Source: Mantamonas sphyraenae STR306 (taxonomy: Eukaryota; Protista; CRuMs). From it: a stretch of 64,000 nucleotides of DNA. Of the stretch, positions 36,797 through 62,589 are shown in pieces. Numbering within the stretch: the stretch's first letter is position 1; each line of letters starts with the position of its first letter. The stretch lies in assembly GCA_026936335.1 (NCBI GenBank), contig JAPMXV010000071.1:62001-126000 (forward strand), written 5' to 3'. The notes under the pieces are model-generated. The model was not told the DNA's origin. It did no database searches and saw nothing but the letters and a program-made list of their open reading frames with translations. The position numbers were made by a program, and so were the translations under genes.

Positions 36797-38117
36797 ATGT
36801 CCACGCCAGAGTCGCCAGGCAGCGACGAGGGCGGTAGCGGACGCGAGGGAAGCAGTTCCATGTCAGCGTCCGCGTATGCAAGCGAAGAGATGTTGGCCAA
36901 TGCGGTGGACAGTGTGGAAGGCGAGCTGTTGTTTGAACTGGACGAGCTGCACGACTGGTCCAAGCAGAACCGCACCCTTGTGGACGAAAGCAATGTCGAC
37001 CAACAGGTGCGCAGGCGCATCTGGAGTGGCCGTGTGCCCGTGGTGTTTCGTCTGCACCCGGATGACCTTGCCAGCAACGAGAAACCTGCCCCGATGATGG
37101 TAACCCTCTCCCCAACGCACAGAAGATTTCGCAGCCTCCAAAACAACCACCGCCCACGCTCACACTCTGTGTCCGCACGCCCCCCCCCCCCCCCTACGCT
37201 GTTGTTCATGGCCCGTATGATCGGTGAATCTGTGCTGTGCACGTACAATCCACACGCCGTCGACACACCAGGTCATGGTTCCTCGCACGATGTACTTTCC
37301 CATGTTCTTTGCCAAGCTCGGCAGCCACTTTGCCCGCTTTGTGCCGTCGATCAGCACCGAGGTGTGGTTGGAGTACGCCAATACGCCCGTCAAGTGGCAT
37401 TTGCCCGTGGGTCTGCTCTACGACCTCATGGCAGGTCCAGACACGCTGCCGTGGGAACTCTTTGTCCATTTCCAGGGCCAGCCCGACTCTCTGCTCGCCT
37501 CACCGTCCATGCAGACCCTCTCCTGGCACTATGTGTCCACCATCAAAGAGGCCGACTACATCAAGAATGGCTCCACACGCAAAATCATGTCGCTGTCCAA
37601 GAACGACCAAGAGTCGCTGTGGAACGGCGTGTGCACCGCAGACTACGACGCCTTTTGGGCCGTCAACGACGTGCTGTGCAGCAACCCTCTCAAGTACAAA
37701 ATGTTGCCCATGCGTGTGTACACATCGCAATCCTCCTGGCGCCAGCGTGCTGTTGAACCAACCGTGAGCGACGAAAACACTCCGCGCTCCCTGTTTGCCG
37801 CCCTCCAAGTGTTTCTCCCAGAGGTCTTTGTCGATGAGGAAACAGACACACAGAGCATGGATGCAGACACAGACACAGACACAGACACAGACACGGATAC
37901 GGATGCAAAGGGCAAGCAGGCGAGCAAATCAACCTCGCAACACGGCGGCGTCGTGCCGGCCTCTGTCAGCACACACCGCGTCTTTGTACAAGGCGTCGAG
38001 GTGCCCCTGGACACACCCATCACATGGCTCTACCAGCACACCAGCTACCCTGACAATTTTCTCCACGTGGCTGTGGTGGCCGTCGCCGTGGACGACAAAA
38101 AGACATGGGCCAGGTGA
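36797..38117 (+). CDS. ATG5: Autophagy protein ATG5; intron ~37100-37271
   Basis: IWSGRVPV, KWHLPVGLLYDL, IKEADYIKNG, QGVEVPLDTP, YPDNFLHV. Confidence 0.93.
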
Positions 38118-38276
38118 CCGACTCTCCAGAGGAGAGTGGAGAGTAAAGGGGATTGTTGTGAAGGGGAAGCAACACGATTGAAGCATGGATTGGGGTTTCA
38201 TTGTGCAATGCACTGCACTGCCCAAGCTCGGGCCCGACCACCCAATCACTTTCCTCCTCCTCCTCTTCGGATTTCC

Positions 38277-39949
38277 ATGTTTGCACGAGCTACACGCACT
38301 AGCACAGGTGTGGTCCAACGCCTGGGTCTGGCCGCCATGGCCTCACACAACAGCGTCCAGGCGCTGTCCACGTCGGCTGTGGTCGACAAGTCGGCGGTAG
38401 GTTTTGTGACGTCGCTCTCGTTGTCTCACAACCCGGACTCCGAACCTGCGCAGACACCGCTGTTCGGCAAGGGCAGAGCACCACTGCCCACCCATGCATG
38501 CACCCATGTCCAACAAGCTTCCGTGTATGTCTGCATGCACTCCAATCTGCCGCGCGGGTCTCTGTGTGCCCGCACAGAGGCCCTGTGAAATGCGAGCATC
38601 CCTCTCGTCCCGCACGGAGAGTTTCTGCCCCCCCCCAACGCCCCCGTTGCCAGCTCATGTGTGCGAGCGCTGCGCACATCGCAGGCGAGATGACAGACGC
38701 AGCATAGACGGCAAGAGACTGACACGACACACACATGGATGCACACGAACGGCTTTCACAGGGCTTCCGCGACGAGCTGCCGGGTTTGGTGGAAAAGGCC
38801 AAGCTGGGCGGCGGCAAAGAACGCCTTGCCAAGCAGCACGAGAAGAACAAGCTGACGGCACGCGAGCGCATCGATGTGTTCCTTGACGACGGCAGCTTCC
38901 GCGAGTTTGACATGTTCAAGACGCACCGCTGCACCGACTTTGGCATGGAGAAGAAGCAGTACGCCGGCGACGGCGTGGTGACGGGCCAGGGCACCGTCAA
39001 CGGCAAACCAGTCTTTCTCTTCTCCCAGGACTTTACCGTGTTTGGTGGTTCGCTGTCCGAGACGCATGCCGAGAAGATCTGCAAGGTGATGGACAAGGCC
39101 ATGCTTGTGGGTGCACCGGTGATTGGCCTCAACGATTCGGGCGGCGCACGCATCCAGGAGGGAGTGTCGTCGCTGGCAGGCTATGCCGAGGTGTTCCAGC
39201 GCAACGTGATGGCCAGTGGCGTGGTGCCCCAGATTTCCATGATCATGGGCCCCTGCGCAGGAGGTGCGGTGTACTCGCCGGCCATCACCGACTTTGTCTT
39301 TATGGTGCAGAACACGTCGCACATGTTCATCACGGGTCCCGACGTGGTCAAGACGGTCACCAACGAGGAGGTGACGTTTGAGCAGCTTGGAGGCGCCAAC
39401 ACGCACGCCAAGAAGTCGGGTGTGGCCCACGGCACGTTTGAGAACGAGGTGGAGGCCCTGCTGCAGCTGCGTCGCTTTGTCTCCTTCCTTCCCTCGTCCA
39501 ACCGCGACGAGCCGCCCATGCGTCCCACCAACGACACACGCAGCCGCCTGGCCGAGGATCTGGATGCGATTGTGCCCACGGATCAGACCACGGCCTACAA
39601 CATCAAAGACGTGGTCGCCAAGGTGGTGGACGAGGCCGACTTTTTCGAAATCATGCCCACGTACGCACGCAACATTGTGGTGGGCATGGCCCGCATGGAG
39701 GGACGCACCGTCGGCGTGGTGGCCAACCAGCCCACGGAATTGGCTGGATGCTTGGACATCGACGCCAGCGTCAAGGCTGCCCGCTTTGTCCGCTTCTGCG
39801 ATGCCTTCAACATTCCCCTGCTCACGTTTGTGGACGTGCCGGGCTTCCTGCCGGGCACGGGCCAGGAACACAACGGCATCATCCGCCACGGCGCCAAGCT
39901 GCTCTACGCGTACGCCGAGGCCACCGTGCCCAAGCTCACCGTCATCACT

Positions 39950-48839: not shown

Positions 48840-48905
48840 AGAAGAATTGTTTGATTGTTGATGAAGGGGCGAAGGTGGATCCATCCCAACTTCCCCACAT
48901 ACCGA

Positions 48906-51900
48906 ATGTACGAGGAGTTGGATTTGAGCAGTGATGAGGAAGATGGGGGCGGCGTGGTGGTGGTTGCACTGACGCCACAGGAGAGACGTGCGCAAGCGGG
49001 CGGACGCACGTACGGCTTTACCACGCCCGCAAGCACGGCGGTGGCCAGTGGAGTGGGCGAAAGTGTGTCTGGAGCGGGGCACACAAGCACAACAAACACA
49101 TCGTCTGTTTCAAGTGGCCAGGAGCAGGGTCAGGGCACGCGTGGGGGCGTGTTCTTGCCGCCTGTGGATGCAAGCGACGCGGCGGCAACCCGCAACAGCA
49201 ACGGGGGCAGCAACAGACATGCAGAAGGGACGAAAGACGAGCAACAAGTCATGGACGAACTGTGGGACGCAGCACTGCTGTCGTCGGCGTCAGAGTCGTC
49301 GGTGACAAGCAGCAGCGGGGCCAGCGAGCGACTGCGTGAGACGGCGCGGCAGAGCGGCGCGTTGTCGACGTCGACGGGCTCTGTGGCGGCCGGATCGACC
49401 ACCTCTGTGCACAGCCACCACACAGGGGCACTGGAAGCCGAGGACGTGTTTGTCAGCCCTTACATTGAAATCGATGACCTCATGGCCTCGGACAGCGAGG
49501 GAAGCGAACGATCGGGCGGTCCACGAGCCGCTTTGCTTGGTTCAGACGGTCCGGGTGACCGGCACGGCGATGGAAACGACGATGCCGAGGACGGGATGGG
49601 TCACAAAGTGGGCTTGGAAAGCAGCACATTGTCCCTGTCGAGCGGGGTGGAGTCGACGACACGGGAGGCCATTGAACAGGCGAGGCTTGTGTGGGACCCG
49701 CGCACGCGAGCGCAAATTGCAGCGGGCACGTTCTCAGACAGCACCGGCGAGCCTGGATCGTCGCCGTATGACATTGACGTGGAGCATGAACTGCAAATCC
49801 AGGCGGCGCACGGCAACATGGGCGACCTGGACGGCTATGAACCAGACGGCCAGTATTACGCCGTCGACGATGATTACTACGCATACCAAAACGATGCGGC
49901 GAACGACAATTCGGGATGGGCGTCTGACAGCGAACATGCGTACGAAAACTACCCTTTCCCCTATCCAGATGTGCTCGACGGCGGGGCCGATGCAGATGCA
50001 CAGGGCAGCGCCGCCCTGAGCCTTCCCACCAACGATTGGCACATGGATGCGTTTGACACCGATGAGGCACTCGGCTCGGGCTCATCTGGCGTCTCACTCA
50101 GCGAGAGCTTTTCCACATCATCGTTGAACGAGAGTGCTGCAGGCGGGTCAAGTGTGCCCTGGCTCGCCGTGCCAGCGCAGGGTGGCACGGGGAGCGACAG
50201 CAGCACGAGTCCAGTGGGCTCACCGCGTGGTGGTGGAAGCAGTGGAACAGGCTCTGGTGCAGGTGCAGGGAGCAGCAGTGGGGCCAAGCGACGCAAGCGG
50301 CGCAAGAGTTCGCGGCGCAGGCAAAAGGTCAAAGATTGGAACGCAGAGTTTCAGGACATCATTGACGGGCTGGAGAAGACGTCCGAGGACCAGGCAACGG
50401 CCATGTACAACCGACTGCGGCATCTGGCACACGACTTTGTGGCCATCGCAAAGCGATACGGCGAAATCATCATTTCGGAGTACTGCCTGCCTGACGAGCA
50501 GAAAACCATCCGGCCGGTGTCCATCGGTGGGCAGGCTGGTGGGGACAAGTACATTTGCCAGAACATTCTTTTCAAGTTTGCCATCGACCGCGGCCTGTAC
50601 AACGGGGACGAGTACGCAGCGAAAGCTGCTGGCCACGACCTGAAGGGTCTCATGAGCTACTTCAACGTGCGCACGCCGGACATCCACCTGCCACTCATGG
50701 CTCTGATTGACTACCGTGGCTTCCGTCTCATTGCCTTGTCGTTCCTGCCCATCCAGAAGGAAACAATCATCTACGGTTCCTGCGACGCCAAGGAGATCCA
50801 CGCCAGCGACCATCGGTTCAACACAATCATGTCTCAGTTTGGCAAGCGCCTGAATCTCAAGGGGCACCGTGTGGGTCATCCGTCCAATGCATGCACCATC
50901 CACGGACCGGGCGACATCGAGGGCCACCTGGGAACAGATGGGCGTTACTACCTGATCGACTTTGCACGTCTGATGCCCCCAGAGCCACCGCGTGGCACAG
51001 GATTCAAGGGGGGGCATCTGTTCCGTCTGCTGCGTCCGGAACTGGTCAAGTTGAGCTCCGTGCCCCTGAGCAGCGATGCATTCACGCGGTTTGGCCAGCA
51101 CAACAACCACATTCACAACGAAGAAGTGCGACAGGCGACGAAGCTGCGGGACCACGTGCTGATCCCAGAGTTTGCACGATGGCTGGACAGTCAGCCCGAC
51201 GCCGAGTTGCAACAGCTGCGACTGAGCGAGTTGATGCATCGCAAGGGCATCAATGTGCGGTGCTGTGGGCGAGTGCGTGCTTGTAGCACGAGTGTACAGG
51301 TGCGGAAGCTGCTGCTTCAGGAGATGGTTGTACGAACGATCAAAAACACCCTGCGGGAAGTGTTGCGCATGCGCATGCGTGAGAATGGCATGCTGAGCGA
51401 GGAACCATACCATCACGCGGTGGTTTCGTATCTGAACCTGGTTCTGGGCAACCACACACACGCAGAGGCAAGCCGTGCGTACTGGGTGGGTGACCTGAAG
51501 CCGCGGCTGGTTCGGCATTTTGTGTACGCGCTGAACAGCGACGAACTGCTGCCCGAGTACGACCTGCGTGCCACAATGGACTTGTACAGTGTGTTCCATC
51601 GGCTGCAGGGCATGTGCGGCATCACGTTCTCGGACGAGGCGCTGCGTGAGTTGCGCGAGAGCTCGCGCGAGTTTGAGTTTGTCGACCCGGACATCCAGAA
51701 GATCGAGGCCACGGTGAAGCACATGAACCTGATTGCGCATGCAGAAGGCAGCGCTCTGTACATCCAGGCCATGCAGCGGAGTGGCAAGGAGGGCGAACGG
51801 TTGCTGAAGCGGGCTGTGGAAAAGTTCCGCGAGGCCATCCAAAGCAGTCCGGACAACTTTGTCACGTTGCACCAGTGGGGAAACGCCCTGTTTCGCATGG

Positions 51901-54326
51901 CCATGATGCGTGAGGCCAACCTGTACAGTGGCGCAGACGTGATGCAGGAACTGCGGGTGATGGAGTCGTTTTTCCGAGAGGCCGAACTGAAGTTCCAAGA
52001 GGCGCTGCAGATCAGCAGCACAGCGCACGAGGTGCAGTACAGCTGGGGCAACATGAAACTGGCACATGCCATCATCATCGGGGACACGCTCGGTGATACC
52101 GTGCGGCAGGGGTCGCTGTTGGAGAGTGCGGGCGAGCACTATGAGCGTGCATTTGCGTTGCATCCCGCGTACCAACTGCGTCTGCATTGGCTGGCCGATC
52201 TGGAGAACCGCAAACAGCTTGCCATCATGGTGCACGTGGACCAACAGAACGCACGATATGCGTTTGAGCCGTACCAGGGATCGCAGCATCGCAGGCAGAC
52301 GAGCGACGGTGGCGAGGAGCTGGCCGATCTGGACGATCTGGGTCTGGGTCTGGGAGGAGGATTGGCATCGGGTGGAGTGTCCACGTCGTCGTCCTCATCG
52401 TCCCTGTCGTCGCTGAGCAGCGGCGGGCGCCCGACAGGCCATCATGGAGGACATGGTCCGTTCCAGCATCCACACTCGCCCGTGGGTGCAATGTGGGGCG
52501 GCGGAGGCATGCATCCGTCGCTTTCATCATCGTCACTGGCGTCGTCGTCGTCCACAAACTCGCTAAGCTCGTATCTGGACGAGTCGGAAGCGGCACACCA
52601 ACAGCACCGGCACCATTCGATGCGCGTGCACGGCGTGGTGGCGCCCATGGGCTCCTCATCCTCTTCATCTTCCTCGTTCGTGTCTGAGAACGACGGCCCG
52701 AGCTCCGGACTGGGCCGCACGACGAGCATGGAGCCGTACGAGTTGTATGTGGTGGACCTGTGCCACCTGAGCGAATTTGTAGACGACAAATTGATTGAGA
52801 ACCTGGCGTTGAACAACAACGAGATGCGCATCCTGCGCGTGCATCACTGCCGCAACCTGACCGACCGCAGCATCGAGGCGCTAAGCGAGTGCTGCCCCGA
52901 GCTGGAGGAACTGCGGGTGAGCAACTGCGAAGAGTTGACGTCGACGGCGATGCACAACCTCTTGGCCAATTGCTACGAATTGCAATCGCTGGACGTGAGT
53001 GGATGCACTGGGTTGGGACCGGAGTTCCTGGTGGATGTGACGATGGCCACGTCGCAGCTGCGAGTGCTGCGTGCAGACAGGGTACCATTGACAGACGCGG
53101 CACTGTGCAAGGTAGGCCAAAGCACCGAGGAGCTGCGTGTGCTGATGCTGAACGGATGCCGCGACGTGACGGACGACGGCATGCTTGCGGTGGCGGCGAC
53201 CAACCACAAGCTGCGTGTGCTGCACCTGGCAAGGTGTCGCTCAGTGAGCAACAAGTGCATTGGGATGGTGGCCCAACACTGCTGGCAAGACCTGGTGGAG
53301 CTGAATCTGGATTCGTGTCGCATCACGGACGAAGGAATCAACGCGCTGGTGTACCGCAAGGTGGCTCTGCGCACATTGGTACTGAGCAAGTGCACTGGCA
53401 TCACAGATGTTGCGTTGATTGCACTGAGCAGACAGATGGGCAGCACTCTGACGTCGTTGGATTTGAGCAGCTGCAGACAGGTGGCAGACAAGGGCGTGTC
53501 GCAAATAGCGTCGAATTGCACGCAGCTGCGCATGTTGCGGCTGGACGACTGTGTCAACGTGTCCAACGTCAGTGTGGCCGAGGTGTGCACGCAATGCACG
53601 GAGCTGCGCGTGCTGTCGCTGTCCAAACTGACTCGTGTGAGCGACGCCGGTATCATGCCGCTGGCCACGCATTGCCAGCATCTGCACGAGCTGGACCTGG
53701 GTGGCATGGTCAAAGTGACCAACGCGGCGATCTTGGCCATTGCCGACGGTCACTGCCAGCTGACCAAGCTTGTTCTGGAGGGCTGTGTCAAGGTGTCGGA
53801 CGAGGCCGTGTCTGCGGTGGCTGTGTTCAATCCCATGCTGACGTCGCTGAACATTCGCATGTGCGAGCTGGTGACAGACAACGCCATCAGCGCCCTGGCG
53901 CTGAATTGCCCGCAGCTGCGGTCGCTGCACCTGGAGATGAACTACAACGTGACCAACATGTCGATTGTGCAGGTGGCCAGCCATTGCCGTGCACTGCAGC
54001 ACCTGTCCATCAACCGCTGCAAGCACATCTCGGATATTGCCATCGACGCCGTGGCCACGTACTGTTCCCTGCTGCGCACGTTGAATCTCAAGGCCAACCG
54101 CAATATCAGCGGAGTGTCCATTGTGCGTATTATTGAAGAGTGTCGCTGGCTGCGCACGCTCATTTTGGAGGGAGTCAAGAACTTGGACGACACCGTGCTG
54201 ATCAGCATTGTTGAGAACGGTGAGAACCTGGCCAAGCTTAGCCTGGACAACAACGGACGCTTCTCGCAGGACGTGCGACAGATGCTCATTGACGGGCGAC
54301 CGGGATTGCAGGTGTTGCGATGGTGA
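48906..54326 (+). CDS. Clu-domain plus TPR-like plus Cys-containing (AMN1/FBXL-type) LRR protein, intronless
   Basis: DWNAEFQ, GGQAGGDKY, PLMALIDYRGFRL, DIEGHLGTDGRYYLIDFARLMPPE, LLRPELV, MHRKGINVR; about 18 LxxCxxITD repeats. Confidence 0.88.
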   Translation: MYEELDLSSDEEDGGGVVVVALTPQERRAQAGGRTYGFTTPASTAVASGVGESVSGAGHTSTTNTSSVSSGQEQGQGTRGGVFLPPVDASDAAATRNSNGGSNRHAEGTKDEQQVMDELWDAALLSSASESSVTSSSGASERLRETARQSGALSTSTGSVAAGSTTSVHSHHTGALEAEDVFVSPYIEIDDLMASDSEGSERSGGPRAALLGSDGPGDRHGDGNDDAEDGMGHKVGLESSTLSLSSGVESTTREAIEQARLVWDPRTRAQIAAGTFSDSTGEPGSSPYDIDVEHELQIQAAHGNMGDLDGYEPDGQYYAVDDDYYAYQNDAANDNSGWASDSEHAYENYPFPYPDVLDGGADADAQGSAALSLPTNDWHMDAFDTDEALGSGSSGVSLSESFSTSSLNESAAGGSSVPWLAVPAQGGTGSDSSTSPVGSPRGGGSSGTGSGAGAGSSSGAKRRKRRKSSRRRQKVKDWNAEFQDIIDGLEKTSEDQATAMYNRLRHLAHDFVAIAKRYGEIIISEYCLPDEQKTIRPVSIGGQAGGDKYICQNILFKFAIDRGLYNGDEYAAKAAGHDLKGLMSYFNVRTPDIHLPLMALIDYRGFRLIALSFLPIQKETIIYGSCDAKEIHASDHRFNTIMSQFGKRLNLKGHRVGHPSNACTIHGPGDIEGHLGTDGRYYLIDFARLMPPEPPRGTGFKGGHLFRLLRPELVKLSSVPLSSDAFTRFGQHNNHIHNEEVRQATKLRDHVLIPEFARWLDSQPDAELQQLRLSELMHRKGINVRCCGRVRACSTSVQVRKLLLQEMVVRTIKNTLREVLRMRMRENGMLSEEPYHHAVVSYLNLVLGNHTHAEASRAYWVGDLKPRLVRHFVYALNSDELLPEYDLRATMDLYSVFHRLQGMCGITFSDEALRELRESSREFEFVDPDIQKIEATVKHMNLIAHAEGSALYIQAMQRSGKEGERLLKRAVEKFREAIQSSPDNFVTLHQWGNALFRMAMMREANLYSGADVMQELRVMESFFREAELKFQEALQISSTAHEVQYSWGNMKLAHAIIIGDTLGDTVRQGSLLESAGEHYERAFALHPAYQLRLHWLADLENRKQLAIMVHVDQQNARYAFEPYQGSQHRRQTSDGGEELADLDDLGLGLGGGLASGGVSTSSSSSSLSSLSSGGRPTGHHGGHGPFQHPHSPVGAMWGGGGMHPSLSSSSLASSSSTNSLSSYLDESEAAHQQHRHHSMRVHGVVAPMGSSSSSSSSFVSENDGPSSGLGRTTSMEPYELYVVDLCHLSEFVDDKLIENLALNNNEMRILRVHHCRNLTDRSIEALSECCPELEELRVSNCEELTSTAMHNLLANCYELQSLDVSGCTGLGPEFLVDVTMATSQLRVLRADRVPLTDAALCKVGQSTEELRVLMLNGCRDVTDDGMLAVAATNHKLRVLHLARCRSVSNKCIGMVAQHCWQDLVELNLDSCRITDEGINALVYRKVALRTLVLSKCTGITDVALIALSRQMGSTLTSLDLSSCRQVADKGVSQIASNCTQLRMLRLDDCVNVSNVSVAEVCTQCTELRVLSLSKLTRVSDAGIMPLATHCQHLHELDLGGMVKVTNAAILAIADGHCQLTKLVLEGCVKVSDEAVSAVAVFNPMLTSLNIRMCELVTDNAISALALNCPQLRSLHLEMNYNVTNMSIVQVASHCRALQHLSINRCKHISDIAIDAVATYCSLLRTLNLKANRNISGVSIVRIIEECRWLRTLILEGVKNLDDTVLISIVENGENLAKLSLDNNGRFSQDVRQMLIDGRPGLQVLRW

Positions 54327-54388: not shown

Positions 54389-56399
54389 ATGGAGGATAAA
54401 GACGACGCAGTGGCCACATTTGTTTCTCTTTCGGGATTGGATGCAGAGCGAGCAAGGCAGGTGCTGGCAGCGAATGGATGGAACTTGGAATTCTGCACAA
54501 ACTGCGTCCTGGAAGGGAAGCAGCCCGGCAGCGACGGGAGCTTCGACAGCATGGAAACAGACAGCGCTCTGGGCTTCTCTGGCTTTGGAACGGGTGGGAT
54601 GGGAGGTGGAGGTGGATCCAGGACCAGCAACAGCAGTGGAGGGTCGATGTCAGGATCGAAGCGGAAGCAGCCGGACGAAGGAGAAGCGCGGAAGATTGCA
54701 GAAGTGGTGAGCATCACTGGATGCGAGCCAGACAGCGCACAGAATGCACTGGAGGTGAGTGACCGGATGCGTGGGAGACGTATGGACCAATGCAACGAGA
54801 TGGAGCACGCGTGGCAAGGCCGCATTGGGCCTTTGCGCGCTCGCGCAATTCTCGCGACAACGGCCCGAGACAACTGAGCCGTAGATATGGGACAGATTGC
54901 TGACACAGCAGGAATGGGCTTTTCGAAATGGCTTTGTGACACTGTCACTGGGCCACACACAGGCGTCTGGATACGATGTGGCATTCTGTGTGAACGAGTA
55001 CCTGTCCGGTCGGACGGAACTGTTCGAGTGAGTTGACTGACGGGTGTTGGCTGTTGCGAGAAGCACGCCGTGTCATGATGCACTCAGTCGCCACGTACAC
55101 TGACACCAGGTGTGGCGGCACCGTACTCATCTACCACAGAGGAAATGGAGGGATGGGTGGCGGTGGAGGGCTGGAAGACGACGTGCGCGCGCCGATCTTG
55201 GCCAAGAACGATGTCCTGGCTGGCAACATGGGCAACCTGCGATGTGAGTGACCCCGCGCGTGTGACACTGTGTGACACGTTGTGTGGACGAGTGTCCTCT
55301 TGGAAACTGACACAGCCACGCAGCCAACTACGGAGTGACTCGGGGTGGCAATTCCTTCCAGGCGCCGCGGGCAGTGTTCCAAGTGGACCCTTTTGCAGAC
55401 TTTAAGGGCGCACGAGACAAGAAAGGGGCGGAAAAGAGGCAGAGGCTGGCCGAGATGTTCAAACCGCCTTTGGATCTGATCTATCAGGGCGATTTCAACG
55501 AGGCGCGAGCGTTTGCCAAGGCCCAAGGCAAGATGGTGATTGTAAACATCCAAAAGAACGACGAGTTTGCGTCGCAGGCGCTGAACAGGGACCTGTGGAA
55601 CAGGGATGAGGTGAAGGAGGTGGTGCAGGACTACTTTGTGTTCTGGCAGCAAGAGGAGAGCACGCTGAGTGGCAAGCAGTTCCTGTCATGGTACCCGACG
55701 TCATCTCTGCCATGCATTTGTCTCATTGATGCACGCACGGGCGAACGCGTGCAGCACTTTGAGGGCCAGGTGAAACGCGACTCGTTTGTGAACATCCTGA
55801 AGCTTCATCGCAACCTAGCCCTGGGCCTGTCCGAGTCCGAGGTGGAAGAAGAGGATGAAGAAGAGGGTGGAAGCTCGACCATGCTGACAGAGGAGGAGAT
55901 GCTGAAGCGGGCCATGGCCGAGTCGATGGGCATGACGGTGGAGGAGCTGGAAAAGGTGCAGAACGAGAACAGCACAACGACCACATCCACAACAACGACG
56001 TCCGGTGGATCAGACGCAATGGACGAACAAGAGACAAGCGGTGAAGGTGGTGGCGGAAGTGGCGATGCAACGGACGCAATGGACGAGGAGGAAACCGAGG
56101 GAGCAGGCGGCAGCGAATGGCAGGTTCCCACGCCCGACGTGGACGAGGACAGGGAACGAGACTGCACGGTGATGCTTCAAATGCCGTCGGGTGATCGTTT
56201 GGAGGGCCAGTTCAACAAGGAGGACCCACTGGCAGTGGTGCACAACCACGTACAGGCGCACATGGGCGAGGAGTTTACACCGTTTGAGTTGATGCAGCGT
56301 TTCCCGAAAAAGGTGTATGGCATGGAGGACATGGAGAGCACGCTGAAGGAGTTGGATTTGGATGGGGCAATGCTGGCTGTGCGACCGCTGGAAGAATGA
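54389..56399 (+). CDS. UBXN7/Ubx5-like p97 adaptor (two UBA-like, UAS, UIM, UBX); about 3 introns
   Basis: VATFVSLSG..LAANGWNLE; VVSITGC..ALE-ASGYDV; EDDVRAPI; LAEMFKPP; LNRDLW; TEEEMLKRAMAES; UBX with FP motif. Confidence 0.88.
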
Positions 56400-56423: not shown

Positions 56424-58031
56424 CTATTCTACATTTTGAATTTGCTCTCGGAATTGATCGATGCTGGTCTTGAGCTCGAGTCCCGTGCGTGTCAGATCCA
56501 GCGTGCTGCTCTTTGCAGCGAGTGTGTTTGACTCGCGCACCAATTCCTGACACAGGAACTCCAGGCGACGACCTTGGGGCCCGCCGTCGACCAAACTCTG
56601 GCCCATGGACACGATGTGAGCGCGCATCCGCTCGATTTCCTCGCGTACATCTGCAGGGAGATTGAGTCGATCACGTGGCGAGCTTCGTGCGCGCACGGGT
56701 CGCTTGGAAGGGCCCTGCGCAGCAGCGGCAGCTGTGTGTTCCAGCTGGGTCGCCAGTTCCAGCAGCTGTGTGCTCAGAATCTTCTTGAGATGGGCACCCT
56801 CGACGGCACGAGACTCGCGCAGCTGTTCAAACGCCTGCCACACGGAGTCATTCAAACGTTCTATCAGCTCCTGGCGCGCTGTTTCTTCGCGATGGGCCTC
56901 GCCGACCACCTGCGCACGCCGTTCGTCCTGCGCGTCTGCAGCAAGCCCCAGGGCCAGAGAAAGCACAGCATCGGCTCGTGGGGCACTGGGTTTCAGGCCA
57001 TGTTTTCTCAGACTGGCGTCTGCTTGCTTCAGGGCGCGTGCGACTTGGTCAAACAGACGGACAGCTGTCTGTGCGTCGTCCAGCTGCCTCCATGCATCCA
57101 TGCGTCCTACCACAGCGTCCATGGGCACCTCATCCAACGGGGACTGACCCGACGCCGACGGACGTTGGCGTGGGTAGACGCGGAGGCGGCCGACAACCGT
57201 GCCCCGATGCACAATCTTGTCCACCATGCGCTTGGCTTCGAATTCCACCTCTGGGTACGCCGTAGCCACAGGCCATGTGAGCGTGAGGCCTCGTCCGTTG
57301 AGAGAGCGGAATTCCACATCCCACGCGTGTGCCTTGTGGCTGCCGCTGACTCGTCCAAAGCCCGTCATGCTGTGCAGCGTCGCCTCGCCAGTGCCTTCGC
57401 CGTCCAGCATGCTCTGCAACTCGTGGGCAAACATTTCAAAGCCAGAGTGGCCACCACTGTTGTTGTTGTTGTTGTTGTTGATGCTGCTACTGCTGCTGCT
57501 GCTGCTGCTCTGTTTGTCTTTTGCCGGGTCTTGGTTCTGGTCGTCGTCGTCGTCGTCGTCGTCCCTTGGACTGTGTTCGTCATGCTCAGCTTGCCTATCC
57601 GTGTCCTGAAAGGCACTGGCAAACAAAGTCTCCATGCGTTCGTCCTCAATGGCTCTGCGGTGAGCTTGCTCGCTCACGTGACTCCTGCTCTGAAGCGGCG
57701 GCAACGCCCACTCGTCCTCGCTCTCTGCCTGACCCAATTCGTCCAAGTCGACCCAAAGTCGCTCCACCTCCTCCTGCACCGCCACTGGTGTCACGCCATT
57801 CACGTCATGGTCGCTCATCCCGTGTTCCGGTTCTATCACTTTGCTCAGTCTGGCTTGCATGCTTGCATCCAAAGCTTGCTGCACTCGCCGATTATGCTCC
57901 TTGTTGCCCTTTGTATCGTCTGCTTCTCGCAGCAGCCATGTTCCCATGTGCCTCCTTGCCAACTCCTGCTCCTGTATTCGCCTCTCAATGTGTCCACGCG
58001 CCACCCAAGAACAAGAACGCCGCACAAACAT
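56424..58031 (-). CDS. yicC: YicC/YloC-family endoribonuclease (YicC_N plus DUF1732) with a long N-terminal extension
   Basis: LHSMTGFGR, WDVEFRSLNGRGL, HRGTV, DVREEIERMRAH, GRRLEFLCQELVRESNTLAAKS, GLELKTSIDQFREQIQNVE-stop. Confidence 0.9.
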   Translation of the reverse strand: MFVRRSCSWVARGHIERRIQEQELARRHMGTWLLREADDTKGNKEHNRRVQQALDASMQARLSKVIEPEHGMSDHDVNGVTPVAVQEEVERLWVDLDELGQAESEDEWALPPLQSRSHVSEQAHRRAIEDERMETLFASAFQDTDRQAEHDEHSPRDDDDDDDDQNQDPAKDKQSSSSSSSSSINNNNNNNSGGHSGFEMFAHELQSMLDGEGTGEATLHSMTGFGRVSGSHKAHAWDVEFRSLNGRGLTLTWPVATAYPEVEFEAKRMVDKIVHRGTVVGRLRVYPRQRPSASGQSPLDEVPMDAVVGRMDAWRQLDDAQTAVRLFDQVARALKQADASLRKHGLKPSAPRADAVLSLALGLAADAQDERRAQVVGEAHREETARQELIERLNDSVWQAFEQLRESRAVEGAHLKKILSTQLLELATQLEHTAAAAAQGPSKRPVRARSSPRDRLNLPADVREEIERMRAHIVSMGQSLVDGGPQGRRLEFLCQELVRESNTLAAKSSTLDLTRTGLELKTSIDQFREQIQNVE

Positions 58032-58081
58032 TCGCTCTCGTTTCTCTGGTTTGCATTGCGCTTGCATTGTCCCACTTCCAC

Positions 58082-59835
58082 TCACATGCTGCTCCCAGCC
58101 ATGGCACTGCTGCTGCCTCCTTCGCTCGTGCCCTGCTTGCTCTCCTTCTGCGCCTCCTTGGCTTCGCGCAGGGAGGCTGTCAGGATGGAGGTGCGCAGCA
58201 TGAGCTCCTTGGTCTTGACCATGACCTCGTTGTGCACAGACGGGTATTGGGCGCTCATGACCACGTGGTTCTTCTTGGAGTCGATCTTTGGCTGGTGCTG
58301 GGCGCCAAAATGGGCGTTCTTGATGAGGCCCACAATCCACTTCTCGGCGGCCTTTTCATCCATGGCCAGCTTGTCCGCCAGCATGGCGATGTCGATGGTC
58401 TTGTGGATGCGGCAGTAGGTCTCAAAGATAAACAGGCGTGCGTTGTGGAGAAAGTCCTCGCGGATGTGGGTGAGGAAAAAGTCGTTGGTGAGCACCTGCA
58501 GGCAGATGTCCAGCTGCTTCTGGGCGCCGTCAAAGTCAAACTTGACGTACAGCGACTGCACAAACTCCAGGATGGGGTCCTGATACGTGTAGGCCTCCAC
58601 CTCAATGACGCGCACAAGGTCGTTGAGGACGGCATGGCCGCGCTTGTTGGTGATGACGGCGGCAGTGAGGTAGCGCAGCACGTGCGGCGCCTGTGTCTGG
58701 ATGGCGTTCATGTACTTGTCGTCCAGGAACATGTCGATGATGCCGTTGCGTCCGGTGCTGTGGTTGAAAAACACAAAGAGGGCCCAGTGGATGAGCCAGG
58801 TGCGCTGCTGCAGCTGTTCCAGTGGCGTCCAGCTGCTGCGTCCGTCGATGGCCTCCCGCAGCCTCTGCAGGTCGCCCTGGGCTTCGTCCCAGTTGTTTGT
58901 CATAATTTCGCAGGCAAACTTGCCCCACAGTGCGTTCAGCACTGCGTCCGAGTCCTTGCTCAGGTGCGTAAAGTTGTGCAGGTACGGAGCCGCCTTGCCG
59001 TAGTTGCCAGCCTCGTACTGCAGCTTGGCCACGTCGTACATCGCCTGGATATGATCGCTCGTGATCTGGACATGTGTGTGCAGGGTGTGGCGGGGTGGGT
59101 TGTTTCTGGGTGAGTGTGTGTCGTCGCGTCGAGGGTGGACGGCCGAGTCCAACGTGGCCGCATGCCGGGTTGCTTTGGGTGCCACTCCTTGCTCACATGC
59201 ACACGGAGGTCACTCTGTGCCCTGCTTGCGCTTCCGTGTGCACTGGATACTAGGGGATAGACAGCCCTTCCCAACGATCCATGGACTCACCTCGTAGTTC
59301 TCTGCCAGAAACTCGGCGCTGAAGGTTTTGTCGCTCTCAAACTGCAGCATCAGCTCCTGGTCGTCGACCACCTTGAGCAGCGGCTTGGCTGCATCCTTGC
59401 TGTCTTTGAGCTTGCTCTTGAGCTCCAGAAGCTTCTCGTCGGCCTCTTGGTGGCCTGTGTGTGTGCGTGTGTGGGAGGGAGTGTGCGTGTGAGCGGCCAT
59501 GCACAATTTCGCCAGCCCCAAGCCGTCGCGAGAGAGGCGCCTGTACGGCCCAGGGAAGTCGGTTGAGAGCACAGAGGATGCAGCAACCCACCTTCGTCGT
59601 TCTGGTACAGCTCTGTCCACAGGTCCTTGTAGGCACCGAGCATGGCGGTGTCCTTAAACACGGCGAGGCGGGCCTTGTTGATCTCCTCGACGGGGTAGAT
59701 GTTGCGACTTTCCAGGAAGGACAGCAAGGGCAGCATCATGTGCCGATCCAGAAACTGGCCCAGAGTGGCCGTGAGATCGTGTTTGGCGGCATCGAATCCA
59801 CCGGTCGCTTCCGAAGAGGACGATGAGGAAGACAT
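58082..59835 (-). CDS. EIF3E: Translation initiation factor eIF3 subunit e (INT6); 2 introns
   Basis: FLDRHMMLPLLSFL, AKLQYEAGNY, ALWGKFACEI, QRTWLIHWALFVFFN, ETYCRIH. Confidence 0.96.
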
Positions 59836-60699: not shown

Positions 60700-61781
60700 T
60701 CATTCCTCATCGGCGCCCCCCACAGCCTGCTGCGACTGCAGCAAATCGTGCCGAAGGGACTGTGCATCGAGTTTCTTGGCACGTCGTTGCTCACTCTGTA
60801 ACAGGGTGCTCTGCATGAGGGTGTACAGTTGGGAGGAGGCGTCCATGCACAGGTCCATGCCCTGCTGGACATGCTCCATGCTCATCTGGCCACTCTGGAG
60901 CACTTGGGTCACCTCTGCCAGGCTGACCATGGCAGCCACAGTGACCAGCGCCGTCTGCGCTTGTTCCTCGGCTTGGGTGGGGTCGACACACACGTGTGTG
61001 TCGTCGTCCAGCAGCACAGCCGAGCAGGCGGCGGTCATATCATACATCTCAATACCTGCGTCTGCCAGTGCCAGAGAGGCACACGAAATAGCAGCCCCCA
61101 AGGCTCCGCCGTCGTCCTGCAGGACGAGGACAAAGAGGTCGATGGCACTCTTCGGGTACTTGTGCAGCAGCAGCGAGTCGCGAAGGGCGTTCTGCATCAA
61201 CTGACTGTACTCTTTCTCTTCGTCGGTTTGGTAGGAGGTGCGTGCGTTGATGTGGTTGCTCTCTGTGCTGCTTGCTTGTGCCAGCGACGCGCTGTTTCCT
61301 CCGCCGCCGCTCCCTTTCGCTCGTCCGCCGCTCTTGCGTTGCGTGCGTGCAAACGGCGACAGGCGAAAGTCACAGTTGAGTTGTCCCACATCACTAAACT
61401 CCTTGTTGCTCGTCTGTCGCGGTCCATACACGCCGCAGATCAGCTTGGTGTTGTTCAGTTCCAGGTAGGCGGATCCCACGGCCTGGCTGATCGAGCCCGT
61501 GCGCATGTCTGTGCGCAACCATGGGTGGTCAGAGGCGTCCGTGTGTGGTAAAGTGCGTTTTGGGGTGGAGTAAGCATGCGACGGCCGTTGTTCCCTCTGC
61601 ACTTCTCTCTCGCTCCTCCTGTGCCTCACGTACACACTTGGCGGCATTCGTCCACTCCGCGTCCGTCCGCACGCTGTCCCTCGGGCGACACCAGCGCAGG
61701 CGTGGCTCCTTTGGCATCCTCGGCCGATTCGGTGACAGCCACGTCGCGAGGACGCACAGAGGGTGGAATGGAGCTGGACAT
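60700..61781 (-). CDS. Exosome RNase PH-like subunit (MTR3/EXOSC6-like); intron ~61509-61632
   Basis: RADGRGVDECRQV-YMRTGSISQAVGSAYLE, VYGPR, KYPKSAIDLFVLVLQDDG, LALADAGIEMYD, DPT. Confidence 0.88.
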
Positions 61782-61850
61782 CCTTTCGGGGCCGGGGAAA
61801 CGGGGAGTTGGGGTGCGAGCACGTGCGCGGGTTGCCACACAGCAACAGCC

Positions 61851-62589
61851 ATGGCCGACGAAACCACACAGAACAGTGCGCAAGGGAAGCAAGTGGAAGA
61901 TTCGCCTGTCTGCCAGGCAGTGCTGTTTGACATCGACGGCACGTTGACGGACACGGACCCGCTTCATCTGGTGATCTGGAGGCAACTGCTGAAAGAGCAC
62001 CTGGACATCGACTGCACGCACGAATACTACAACGAGACGATTAGTGGACAGAACAACGCCAAACTGATGGCCACGCTGTTTCCAGACATGACAGAGGATG
62101 AGAGGGCACAGTTTGCGTGGGACAAGGAAGCGTTGTTTCGAGAGCAGGGTCGGCATGTGCTGGAGCCCCTCGCAGGACTCATCGACCTGCTGGATGCCCT
62201 GCAGGCGCGCTCCATCAAGATTGCCGCCGTCACCAACGCCCCTCGCGAGAATGCAGAGATGATTATTGAGACTCTGGGTGTGGGCAGCTACTTTGAGACG
62301 CTGGTGATCGGCGACGAGTGCGCCGCACCCAAACCCGACCCAGAGCCGTACCTGGAAGCGGCACGACGTATGCAAGTGGACCCCACACGGTGTGTGGTGT
62401 TTGAAGACTCGCCCACAGGGGCCGCAGCAGGCGTGGCAGCAGGCTGCACCACCGTGGGCATCCTCACCTCCCAGCAGGCGCAGGTTTATGACCAAGGTGG
62501 GGTGTACAGACGTCTGTGACGATTACACACAGGTGAGGTTGGACCAATTGGCTGTGCTGGGCAATGATCTGGTGGGAGAGCGGCAATGA
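61851..62589 (+). CDS. HAD-superfamily phosphatase (CbbY/beta-PGM-like); frame break at ~62484
   Basis: FDIDGTL, VTNAPR, KPDPEPY, FEDSPTG; C-terminus continues FMTKVGCTDVCDDY in another frame. Confidence 0.88.

What the first reader, a model, noticed from the sequence alone, without database searches (positions are those of the whole stretch)
56424..58031. Nuclear-encoded bacterial YicC/YloC endoribonuclease with alphaproteobacterial-type motifs and a possible mitochondrial presequence
Seen: an intronless ORF embedded between eukaryotic genes (UBXN7-like, eIF3e) carries both YicC halves (SMTGFGR...WDVEFRSLNGRGL; DVREEIERM...GRRLEFLCQE..RESNT..KS...GLELK..IDQFREQIQNVE). It has an extra ~240-aa N-terminus that starts with an Arg/Ser-rich, acid-free stretch (MFVRRSCSWVARGH) and contains host-style poly-S/N/D tracts. 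Established: YicC/YloC are bacterial hexameric endoribonucleases linked to sRNA decay and are not a standard eukaryotic protein family. Inference: from my recollection, the 'RSxNGRGL' and 'LTxxGLxLK..IDQ' variants resemble alphaproteobacterial rather than gammaproteobacterial 'RSVNxRYL' versions. This would suggest an endosymbiont-derived organellar RNA-processing enzyme, possibly an undescribed mitochondrial RNA decay system in this lineage. This is the best candidate for a novel system in the window.
Basis: partly seen in the sequence, partly recalled or inferred. Interest (0 to 1): 0.85.

Follow-up and report, generated by a model that had tools for sequence, protein, structure and literature searches.

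The report
Bacterial YicC RNase gene in Mantamonas nucleus
A deep-branching protist, almost certainly Mantamonas sphyraenae, carries in its nuclear genome an intact gene for YicC, an RNA-cutting enzyme so far described only in bacteria; it came from Alphaproteobacteria, but whether it is a mitochondrial relic or a later gene transfer, and where it acts, is still open.

Summary
Window 56424-58031 (-) is one uninterrupted 535-codon ORF. Its C-terminal 317 residues are a YicC/YloC endoribonuclease:
- Both Pfam halves score above their cut-offs.
- The AlphaFold model matches the E. coli YicC structures.
- All ten residues shown to be essential in E. coli YicC are kept.
- 29 of 31 near-invariant bacterial columns are kept.

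The gene lies 24 nt and 50 nt from real eukaryotic genes and uses host-like codons, so it is not contamination. Assembly statistics and the nearest relative identify the organism as Mantamonas sphyraenae.

Phylogeny places the protein with alphaproteobacterial-type YicC (100/99 support) on a very long branch. Nested-in versus sister-to Alphaproteobacteria cannot be resolved. A position outside Pseudomonadota is rejected.

An exhaustive search of 1.84 billion representative proteins found only bacterial-sized proteins among its 150 best hits, and none closer than about 49% over the matched stretches. Two narrower searches also found no eukaryotic or environmental relative, so the gene looks lineage-restricted.

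The "mitochondrial presequence" is unproven: only 15 acid-free residues, in the one part of the ORF without coding signal, and a downstream Met29 start would remove it.

Best reading: a functional, old, alphaproteobacterium-derived nuclease with a new acidic N-terminal extension. A lineage-specific transfer is somewhat more likely than a mitochondrial relic. Read evidence could not be obtained.

The parts
56424..58031 (-). Whole ORF, 535 codons plus a TAG stop at 56424-56426. Intronless, and single copy in the 25.06-Mb genome.
57948..58031 (-). First 28 codons (Met1 to His28). Arg-rich and acid-free for 15 residues: the proposed presequence. There is no codon-usage signal here, so the true start may be Met29 at 57947.
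57378..57947 (-). Eukaryote-specific N-terminal extension (residues 29-218). The full 218-residue extension has net charge -24. It holds poly-D, poly-S and poly-N tracts and has in-frame host-like codon usage. It is predicted as helices joined by disordered linkers, and no homologue was found.
57069..57377 (-). YicC-like_N alpha/beta domain (residues 219-321). Holds Met222, Asn245 and Arg247, the counterparts of E. coli M5, N28 and R30.
56655..57068 (-). Long helical middle region (residues 322-459), the most divergent part. It has eukaryote-specific inserts at domain residues 94-116 (which starts in the end of the YicC-like_N match), 123-126 and 153-162. It also has a 16-column deletion just before the ADVREE motif.
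56427..56654 (-). YicC-like_C (DUF1732) domain (residues 460-535). Holds the catalytic Glu cluster Glu464, Glu465, Glu500 and Glu529, plus Arg499, Arg528 and Phe492.
58082..59185 (-). Upstream neighbour on the same strand: the last exon of eIF3e (PCI domain). Its TGA stop lies 50 nt before the YicC ATG.
55335..56399 (+). Convergent neighbour: a UAS(thioredoxin-like)/UIM/UBX protein. Its stop lies 24 nt from the YicC stop.

Best explanation
This is a functional nuclear gene of Mantamonas sphyraenae. It encodes a YicC/RNase CS-type, divalent-metal-dependent endoribonuclease of alphaproteobacterial ancestry.

Shown:
- The C-terminal 317 residues have the YicC fold: an N-terminal alpha/beta domain, a long helical arm and a C-terminal DUF1732 domain.
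- The four catalytic glutamates, the three RNA-binding arginines and the three structural residues needed for activity in E. coli YicC are all kept.

Inferred:
- The protein assembles, like bacterial YicC, into a hexameric 'clamshell' that closes on an RNA and cleaves it.
- The gene entered the mantamonad lineage from an alphaproteobacterium long ago, most likely by a lineage-specific transfer from prey or an associate rather than by descent from the mitochondrial ancestor.
- It then evolved about twice as fast as its bacterial relatives, took on host codon usage, and gained an acidic, partly disordered N-terminal extension of about 190-218 residues.

Its cellular compartment and substrates are unknown. 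Mitochondrial import is possible but not demonstrated.
For: Family membership:
- Both Pfam halves are above cut-off.
- Sequence matches to PDB 8VER, 8VES and 8HVJ.
- AlphaFold model with pLDDT 82; Foldseek top 11 hits are all E. coli YicC, E down to 2e-13, TM 0.45-0.63.
- All ten residues whose alanine mutants kill E. coli YicC (PMC10793500) are conserved.

Purifying selection:
- The protein keeps 29 of 31 columns that are at least 95% conserved in 174 bacterial sequences, against 16% of variable columns.

Nuclear residence:
- 24 nt and 50 nt from eukaryotic genes, one of which has introns.
- Uniform GC across the window and in-frame host-like codon usage in both domain and extension.
- Spacings of 21-107 nt are usual in this window.
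- Single copy in the genome.

Alphaproteobacterial ancestry:
- Named best hits are all Alphaproteobacteria.
- 139 of 146 top representatives from the exhaustive search fall in the alpha-type clade.
- Careful IQ-TREE (LG+C20 PMSF) gives the alpha-type-plus-eukaryote clade 100/99 support.
- The AU test rejects placement outside Pseudomonadota (delta lnL 82.7, p 0.005).

Old or fast-evolving:
- The best bacterial identity is only 33-40% over the full domain (up to 49% over the matched stretches alone).
- The terminal branch is 2.05 against a median of 0.51.
- Crown-to-tip distance is 2.70 against a bacterial mean of 1.27.

Lineage restriction:
- The 150 best hits of the search of 1.84 billion representatives are all of bacterial size, and none is a closer relative (that collection holds EukProt, including M. 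plastica).
- No longer homologues were found.
- No near-orthologue was found in 241 million metagenome records.
Against:
- TIGR00255 scores below its equivalog cut-off (108 against 167.5).
- The helical arm carries unique inserts and a deletion. These could alter oligomerisation or substrate choice.
- Codon adaptation (0.31-0.47) is lower than in the neighbouring genes (0.42-0.90).
- HGT versus endosymbiotic origin is not resolved. A position sister to all alpha-type YicC is not rejected (p-AU 0.25-0.36).
- The host is known to retain uniquely ancestral mitochondrial systems.
- Only the best 150 of 10,913 hits could be inspected, so divergent eukaryotic homologues could exist below them.
- Only Pseudomonadota and Bacillota were sampled as labelled groups in the trees.
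Confidence: 0.58

Rival explanations
1. Mitochondrial relic. [quoted passage not shown] Its product is imported through the Arg-rich N-terminus and cuts the bacterium-like polycistronic transcripts of the gene-rich Mantamonas mitogenome. On this reading it was lost in all other sampled eukaryotes.
For: - Alpha-type affiliation with no well-supported link to any crown alphaproteobacterial subgroup; the sister-to-all position is not rejected.
- A very long branch, compatible with an ancient split.
- The M. sphyraenae mitogenome encodes 62 proteins, rnpB and a complete Sec system found in no other eukaryote. This is a precedent for unique retention.
- The N-terminus starts MFVRR and is acid-free for 15 residues. 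It resembles the start of the presumed PCCB presequence in the same window.
- The nuclear genome shows no PNPase, RNase E/G or Hfq match and no SUV3_C match. Its mitochondrial RNA-decay kit is therefore not the standard one.
Against: - No homologue was detected in any other eukaryote, including M. plastica. Retention would need many independent losses.
- Three Glu residues at positions 16-23, and a net charge of only +2 over the first 25 residues.
- The first 28 codons lack coding signal, and Met29 gives an acidic N-terminus.
- The rest of the extension is strongly acidic (net -24), which is unusual for a matrix protein.
- The free ML tree nests the protein inside crown alpha-type sequences.
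- The SUV3_C search had no positive control, so that absence carries no weight.
Confidence: 0.28
2. Domesticated or decaying transfer. The gene is a relic of HGT that no longer works as a YicC nuclease. Either it is drifting toward loss or it has been re-used for non-catalytic RNA binding.
For: - The longest branch in the tree and a sub-threshold TIGR00255 score.
- Rearranged helical arm.
- Weaker codon adaptation than the neighbours.
- No expression data.
Against: - A 535-codon ORF without stops.
- 94% retention of near-invariant family columns against 16% of variable ones.
- Every experimentally essential residue is kept.
- A confident YicC-like fold.
Confidence: 0.08
3. Assembly artefact or bacterial contamination. 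A prey-bacterium fragment was stitched into a eukaryotic contig.
For: [quoted passage not shown]
- Read support could not be checked.
Against: - The junctions to eukaryotic genes lie within 24 nt and 50 nt.
- There is no compositional break.
- Codon usage is host-like and the in-frame extension carries host-style low-complexity tracts.
- No bacterium among 1.84 billion representatives is more than about 49% identical over the matched stretches, so no plausible contaminant source exists.
- The contig is longer than 126 kb in a PacBio assembly in which most contigs carry telomeric repeats at both ends.
Confidence: 0.02

Closest known systems
E. coli YicC (RNase CS; PDB 8VER, 8VES, 8HVJ)
   Same: Same two-domain architecture and fold (Foldseek E 2e-13). 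The catalytic residues E216, E217, E252 and E281 are identical, as are the RNA-binding residues R30, R251 and R280, and M5, N28 and F244.
   Different: Only about 22% identity in the structural alignment. The Mantamonas protein has a 218-residue N-terminal extension, extra helical inserts and a 16-column deletion before the ADVREE motif. R211 is replaced by Pro. It is eukaryotic and nuclear-encoded. No Hfq partner system was found in this genome.
Alphaproteobacterial YicC/YloC-family proteins (about 295 aa; for example in Rhizobium, Rhodospirillaceae, Asticcacaulis)
   Same: They are its nearest relatives by score and by phylogeny (alpha-type clade 100/99). They share the RSxNGRGL and LT..GL.LK..IDQFREQ.QN motif variants.
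   Different: 33-40% identity only. The branch is about twice as long as any bacterial member. The extension and indels were seen in none of the 174 aligned bacterial sequences. None of these bacterial proteins has, to my knowledge, been characterised biochemically.
B. subtilis YloC and C. difficile CD25890
   Same: Same family. Both are experimentally shown metal-dependent endoribonucleases acting on small RNAs (PMC8906540 and PMC12255296, listed).
   Different: The Bacillota clade is clearly separate in the tree (100/100), and an AU test rejects grouping the Mantamonas protein on that side.
Uniquely retained bacterial systems of the Mantamonas mitochondrion (SecYEG/SecA, Ccm, rnpB)
   Same: Alphaproteobacterial ancestry, and occurrence in Mantamonas but in almost no other eukaryote.
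   Different: Those genes are encoded in the mitochondrial genome, which proves their organellar descent. This gene is nuclear, and its origin and destination are unproven.

Membership tests
YicC/YloC endoribonuclease family (Pfam PF03755 + PF08340; TIGR00255) | YicC-like_N domain above the Pfam gathering score | tested here: met
   65.2 bits against cut-off 25. Residues 219-321 match profile positions 1-101 of 156.
YicC/YloC endoribonuclease family (Pfam PF03755 + PF08340; TIGR00255) | YicC-like_C (DUF1732) domain above the Pfam gathering score | tested here: met
   91.2 bits against cut-off 27, at residues 460-535.
YicC/YloC endoribonuclease family (Pfam PF03755 + PF08340; TIGR00255) | Full-length NCBIfam TIGR00255 equivalog score | tested here: not met
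   108 bits against cut-off 167.5. Whole-gene matches in the sampled bacteria score from 146 to 450 bits, nearly all above the cut-off. It is a divergent member, not an equivalog by NCBI's rule.
YicC/YloC endoribonuclease family (Pfam PF03755 + PF08340; TIGR00255) | Catalytic glutamate cluster (E. coli E216, E217, E252, E281) | tested here: met
   Glu464, Glu465, Glu500 and Glu529 align to them. Their essentiality is from PMC10793500.
YicC/YloC endoribonuclease family (Pfam PF03755 + PF08340; TIGR00255) | RNA-binding arginines (R30, R251, R280) and structural residues M5, N28, F244 | tested here: met
   Arg247, Arg499, Arg528, Met222, Asn245 and Phe492 are conserved.
YicC/YloC endoribonuclease family (Pfam PF03755 + PF08340; TIGR00255) | YicC three-dimensional fold | tested here: met
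   AlphaFold2 model with pLDDT 82 and pTM 0.66. The Foldseek top 11 hits are all YicC chains, and the next hit has E 9e-3.
YicC/YloC endoribonuclease family (Pfam PF03755 + PF08340; TIGR00255) | Hexameric clamshell assembly and metal-dependent endoribonuclease activity | not testable with these tools
   Needs biochemistry or a multimer model. The inserts in the helical arm leave this open.
Endosymbiont-derived (mitochondrial) nuclear gene | Groups with Alphaproteobacteria in phylogeny | tested here: met
   Alpha-type-plus-eukaryote clade 100/99. A position outside Pseudomonadota is rejected at p 0.005. Nested versus sister is unresolved (p 0.25-0.36). This is also expected for HGT from an alphaproteobacterium.
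Endosymbiont-derived (mitochondrial) nuclear gene | Orthologues in other eukaryotic lineages | tested here: not met
   None among the best 150 hits from 1.84 billion representatives. None among proteins of 351-1116 aa, among the best 120 of 174-555 aa, or in metagenome contigs. Limits: weaker hits could not be listed, and transcriptomes are incomplete.
Endosymbiont-derived (mitochondrial) nuclear gene | N-terminal mitochondrial targeting presequence | tested here: inconclusive
   15 acid-free residues with 3 Arg and an amphipathic moment of 0.71, followed by three Glu at positions 16-23. The first 28 codons have a codon score of -0.14. The alternative Met29 start is acidic. No validated predictor was available.
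Endosymbiont-derived (mitochondrial) nuclear gene | Mitochondrial localisation of the protein | not testable with these tools
   Needs tagging or organelle proteomics.

The most novel reading that the evidence does not exclude
The gene is a surviving piece of the RNA-processing machinery of the alphaproteobacterial ancestor of mitochondria. It is now nuclear-encoded and imported. It cleaves the bacterium-like polycistronic transcripts of the exceptionally gene-rich Mantamonas mitogenome, and Mantamonas alone has kept it, as with its complete mitochondrial Sec system. That would be the first YicC-type RNase working in a eukaryotic organelle. It would imply that LECA's mitochondrion had one.
Probability: 0.25. 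Interest if true: 0.8.

Novelty: new variant of a known kind. Interest (0 to 1): 0.5.

Why it matters
YicC/RNase CS was recognised as a ribonuclease only in 2021-2024. The YicC papers read here describe it as a bacterial family and do not mention eukaryotes.

An intact, selectively maintained copy in a eukaryotic nucleus shows that this clamshell nuclease can be put to work in a eukaryotic cell. It also provides a natural variant with an added acidic extension and a remodelled helical arm.

The host is Mantamonas, whose mitochondrion is one of the most bacterium-like known. The gene is therefore a concrete, testable candidate for an ancestral mitochondrial RNA-processing factor. If it is instead a lineage-specific transfer, it is a clean example of long-term domestication of a bacterial RNase by a bacterivorous protist.

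Tried and rejected
Expression, transcript ends and contig linkage are untested.
- Own protein in public collections. There was no exact record and no self-hit.
- Long, eukaryote-style YicC homologues. A search restricted to 351-1116 aa found nothing.
- The N-terminal extension. No Pfam family, no phmmer hits and no ESM-Atlas look-alike. The whole-protein Atlas hits were bacterial YicC clusters only, at 0.86-0.87.
- Near-orthologues in metagenome contigs. Only bacterial hits of about 30-34% full-length identity.
- Host presequences for comparison. The N-termini of mtHsp70, Hsp60 and ATP synthase beta lie in separate first exons and could not be read off the DNA. Only a presumed PCCB start was usable, and it is not confirmed by Pfam.
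- Taxon labels. One MAG labelled Flavobacteriaceae belongs to the same GTDB phylum as the alphaproteobacteria. It and a MAG labelled Lactobacillaceae fall in the alpha-type clade. I treated both labels as unreliable. Phyla other than Pseudomonadota and Bacillota could not be sampled with labels.
- AU tests. The treekit AU test on the careful tree did not finish in three runs. A full C20 mixture AU run timed out. The reported AU values come from PMSF runs, and the 'outside Pseudomonadota' tree came from a fast constrained search.
- A functional link to the RNase PH exosome subunit 2.3 kb upstream. I considered it and set it aside as ordinary gene neighbourhood in a compact genome.
Full report
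**What is there**

Window 56424-58031 on the minus strand is a single uninterrupted ORF of 535 codons ending in TAG.
- Pfam finds YicC-like_N at residues 219-321 (65.2 bits, cut-off 25).
- Pfam finds YicC-like_C (formerly DUF1732) at residues 460-535 (91.2 bits, cut-off 27).
- The full-length NCBIfam model TIGR00255 matches at 108 bits, below its equivalog cut-off of 167.5. This is a divergent member of the family.
- Against PDB sequences, the only hits are the three E. coli YicC entries 8VER, 8VES and 8HVJ.
- An AlphaFold2 model of residues 219-535, built on a 28-sequence alignment, has mean pLDDT 82.
- The eleven best Foldseek matches to that model are all YicC chains (E 2e-13 to 4e-7, TM 0.45-0.63). 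The next hit has E 9e-3.

**Is the enzyme core intact?**

Mutagenesis of E. coli YicC (PMC10793500) showed that ten alanine changes abolish cleavage:
- the glutamates E216, E217, E252 and E281, proposed to hold the metal ions;
- the arginines R30, R251 and R280, which bind RNA;
- M5, N28 and F244.

In the alignments all ten are conserved here. They are Glu464, Glu465, Glu500 and Glu529; Arg247, Arg499 and Arg528; and Met222, Asn245 and Phe492.

Conservation follows the family's own gradient across 174 bacterial sequences:
- columns at least 95% conserved: 29 of 31 kept;
- columns 80-95% conserved: 65% kept;
- variable columns: 16% kept.

This is the signature of purifying selection on the family's functional core, not of a decaying pseudogene.

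The part that differs is the long helical arm. It has eukaryote-specific inserts at domain residues 94-116, 123-126 and 153-162. It also has a 16-column deletion just before the ADVREE motif. None of the 174 bacterial sequences shares these changes.

**Is it really in a eukaryotic genome?**
- The convergent neighbour is a thioredoxin-like/UIM/UBX protein whose stop is 24 nt from the YicC stop.
- The upstream neighbour on the same strand is the last exon of eIF3e (PCI domain). Its best hits are eukaryotic eIF3e proteins and its stop is 50 nt before the YicC ATG.
- GC content is flat at 0.55-0.61 across the window.
- Spacings of 21-107 nt between adjacent ORFs are usual in this window.
- In-frame codon scores are positive for the YicC domain (0.31-0.32) and for the N-terminal extension (0.47), and negative in the other frames.
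- The scores are lower than in fifteen neighbouring genes (0.42-0.90). That fits either a weakly expressed gene or one not fully adapted to the host.
- The gene is single copy in the genome.
- The closest of the best 150 hits among 1.84 billion representatives is 33-40% identical over the full domain, and up to 49% over matched stretches. No contaminant source exists.

**Which organism?**

The genome handle has 25,061,354 bases in 78 contigs, and the window GC is about 59%. Table 1 of the Mantamonas genome paper gives 25.06 Mb, 78 contigs and 59.19% GC for M. sphyraenae (PMC10492846). The best eIF3e hit, at 77% identity, is the EukProt protein of Mantamonas plastica, and all other hits are at 59% or less. 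I therefore take the window to be from M. sphyraenae, a deep-branching CRuMs protist. This is an inference from matching statistics and the nearest relative, not a labelled record.

**Where does the gene come from?**
- Every named hit among the best 120 of a word-indexed search is alphaproteobacterial. So are nearly all of the 80 best GTDB loci.
- In a FastTree of 292 sequences, 139 of the 146 best representatives from the exhaustive, taxon-blind search fall inside the clade defined by named Alphaproteobacteria, together with the Mantamonas protein.
- A careful IQ-TREE analysis used LG+C20+F+G4 by PMSF on 91 rows: 58 alpha-type, 22 other Pseudomonadota and 10 Bacillota. It recovers the alpha-type clade including the Mantamonas protein with 100/99 support.
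- Inside that clade the protein has no well-supported partner. The nearest are two metagenomic sequences at 77/91.
- Its terminal branch is 2.05 substitutions per site against a median of 0.51. The distance from the crown node is 2.70 against a bacterial mean of 1.27.
- AU tests under PMSF give three results:
  - The free tree (protein nested) has lnL -37966.7.
  - Forcing the protein to be sister to all alpha-type sequences costs 13-18 lnL units and is not rejected (p 0.25-0.36).
  - Forcing it outside Pseudomonadota costs 82.7 units and is rejected (p 0.005). That constrained tree came from a fast search.

Caveats on the phylogeny:
- The ultrafast bootstrap had not fully converged (correlation 0.982).
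- Only two phyla could be sampled with labels.
- The named alphaproteobacterial rows were chosen as best matches to the query.

**Is it found in other eukaryotes?**

The collection searched includes EukProt, as the M. plastica and other EukProt hits for eIF3e show.
- The exhaustive phmmer search returned only bacterial-sized proteins (186-328 aa) among its best 150, none scoring above 124 bits.
- A search restricted to proteins of 351-1116 aa found nothing.
- A scan of metagenome contigs seeded with Mantamonas-specific peptides confirmed only bacterial homologues with about 30-34% full-length identity.

A Mantamonas plastica orthologue should have outscored every bacterial hit, so it is absent from that transcriptome-derived proteome. 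Transcriptomes are incomplete, and I could not list the 10,763 weaker hits. Divergent eukaryotic homologues are therefore not excluded.

**The N-terminal extension and the presequence claim**

The extension is 218 residues, not about 240.
- From about codon 29 onward it has clear in-frame coding statistics.
- The full 218-residue extension has net charge -24 and holds poly-D, poly-S and poly-N tracts.
- It has no homologue or Atlas look-alike.
- It is predicted as five helices joined by low-confidence linkers.

The proposed presequence is weak evidence on three counts.
- It is acid-free for only 15 residues (three Arg). Glu16, Glu21 and Glu23 follow, and the net charge over the first 25 residues is +2.
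- For comparison, the presumed first exon of mitochondrial PCCB in this window is acid-free for 36 residues. That exon is my inference; Pfam did not confirm it.
- The first 28 codons are the only part of the ORF with a negative codon score (-0.14). If translation starts at Met29 (57947), the N-terminus is acidic and unlike a presequence.

No validated predictor was available. Mitochondrial targeting is possible but undemonstrated.

**Context for the organellar idea**

The M. sphyraenae mitogenome is among the most bacterium-like known. It has 62 protein genes, rnpB, and a complete Sec system found in no other eukaryote, and the authors infer that system for LECA (bioRxiv 10.1101/2024.01.30.577968). 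Unique retention of alphaproteobacterial machinery therefore has a precedent in this organism.

The nuclear genome gave no PNPase match above cut-off and no RNase E/G or Hfq match. An SUV3_C search was also negative, but it had no positive control and carries no weight. They do not test it.

**Verdict**
- Observation: confirmed.
- Alphaproteobacterial ancestry: supported.
- 'Endosymbiont-derived organellar RNA-decay enzyme': a live minority hypothesis, at about one in four.

I judge an old, lineage-restricted transfer from an alphaproteobacterium somewhat more likely. This rests on the absence of any other eukaryotic homologue and the weakness of the targeting signal.

In either case the gene most probably encodes a working YicC-type, metal-dependent endoribonuclease. 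I found no description of a eukaryotic YicC in the papers searched. I rate it a new variant of a known kind, of moderate interest.

Noticed in passing
window 60703-61500 (-): An RNase PH-fold exosome subunit (RNase_PH 115.9 bits plus RNase_PH_C) lies about 2.3 kb upstream of the YicC gene. It looks like an ordinary eukaryotic exosome gene, and the proximity is probably chance in a compact genome.
   Followed up: partly
window 48855-54326 (+): One 1823-codon ORF combines a CLU (clustered mitochondria) domain and an eIF3_p135 region with a long C-terminal leucine-rich-repeat solenoid. This is an unusual architecture for a Clu/TIF31 protein.
   Followed up: no
window 61491-62519 (+): A HAD-superfamily hydrolase (HAD_2, 117 bits) preceded by an Arg/Ser-rich N-terminal region of about 140 residues. 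It overlaps the 5' end of the exosome-subunit ORF on the opposite strand.
   Followed up: no
window 37224-38117 (+) and 38274-38396 (+): An ATG5 gene (all three ATG5 domains) ends about 155 nt before the presumed first exon of PCCB. That exon starts MFARATR and is acid-free for 36 residues, a presequence-like start that is useful as a host comparison.
   Followed up: partly
whole window: Gene packing is extremely tight. Stop-to-ATG or stop-to-stop gaps of 21-107 nt are common, so UTRs must overlap neighbouring genes. Long antisense ORFs, such as 56574-58418 (+) at 614 aa, arise by chance in this 59% GC DNA and are not evidence of genes.
   Followed up: partly
G000 (whole genome): Six-frame searches found no PNPase (TIGR03591) above cut-off and no RNase E/G or Hfq match. 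Only S1 and RNase PH fragments matched the PNPase model. The make-up of the mitochondrial RNA-decay machinery in this organism is therefore an open question.
   Followed up: partly
L031 and L055 (GTDB loci): Two MAGs are labelled Flavobacteriaceae and Lactobacillaceae, but they carry alphaproteobacterial-type YicC. The first sits in the same GTDB phylum as Asticcacaulis. They are probably mislabelled or contaminated bins.
   Followed up: partly
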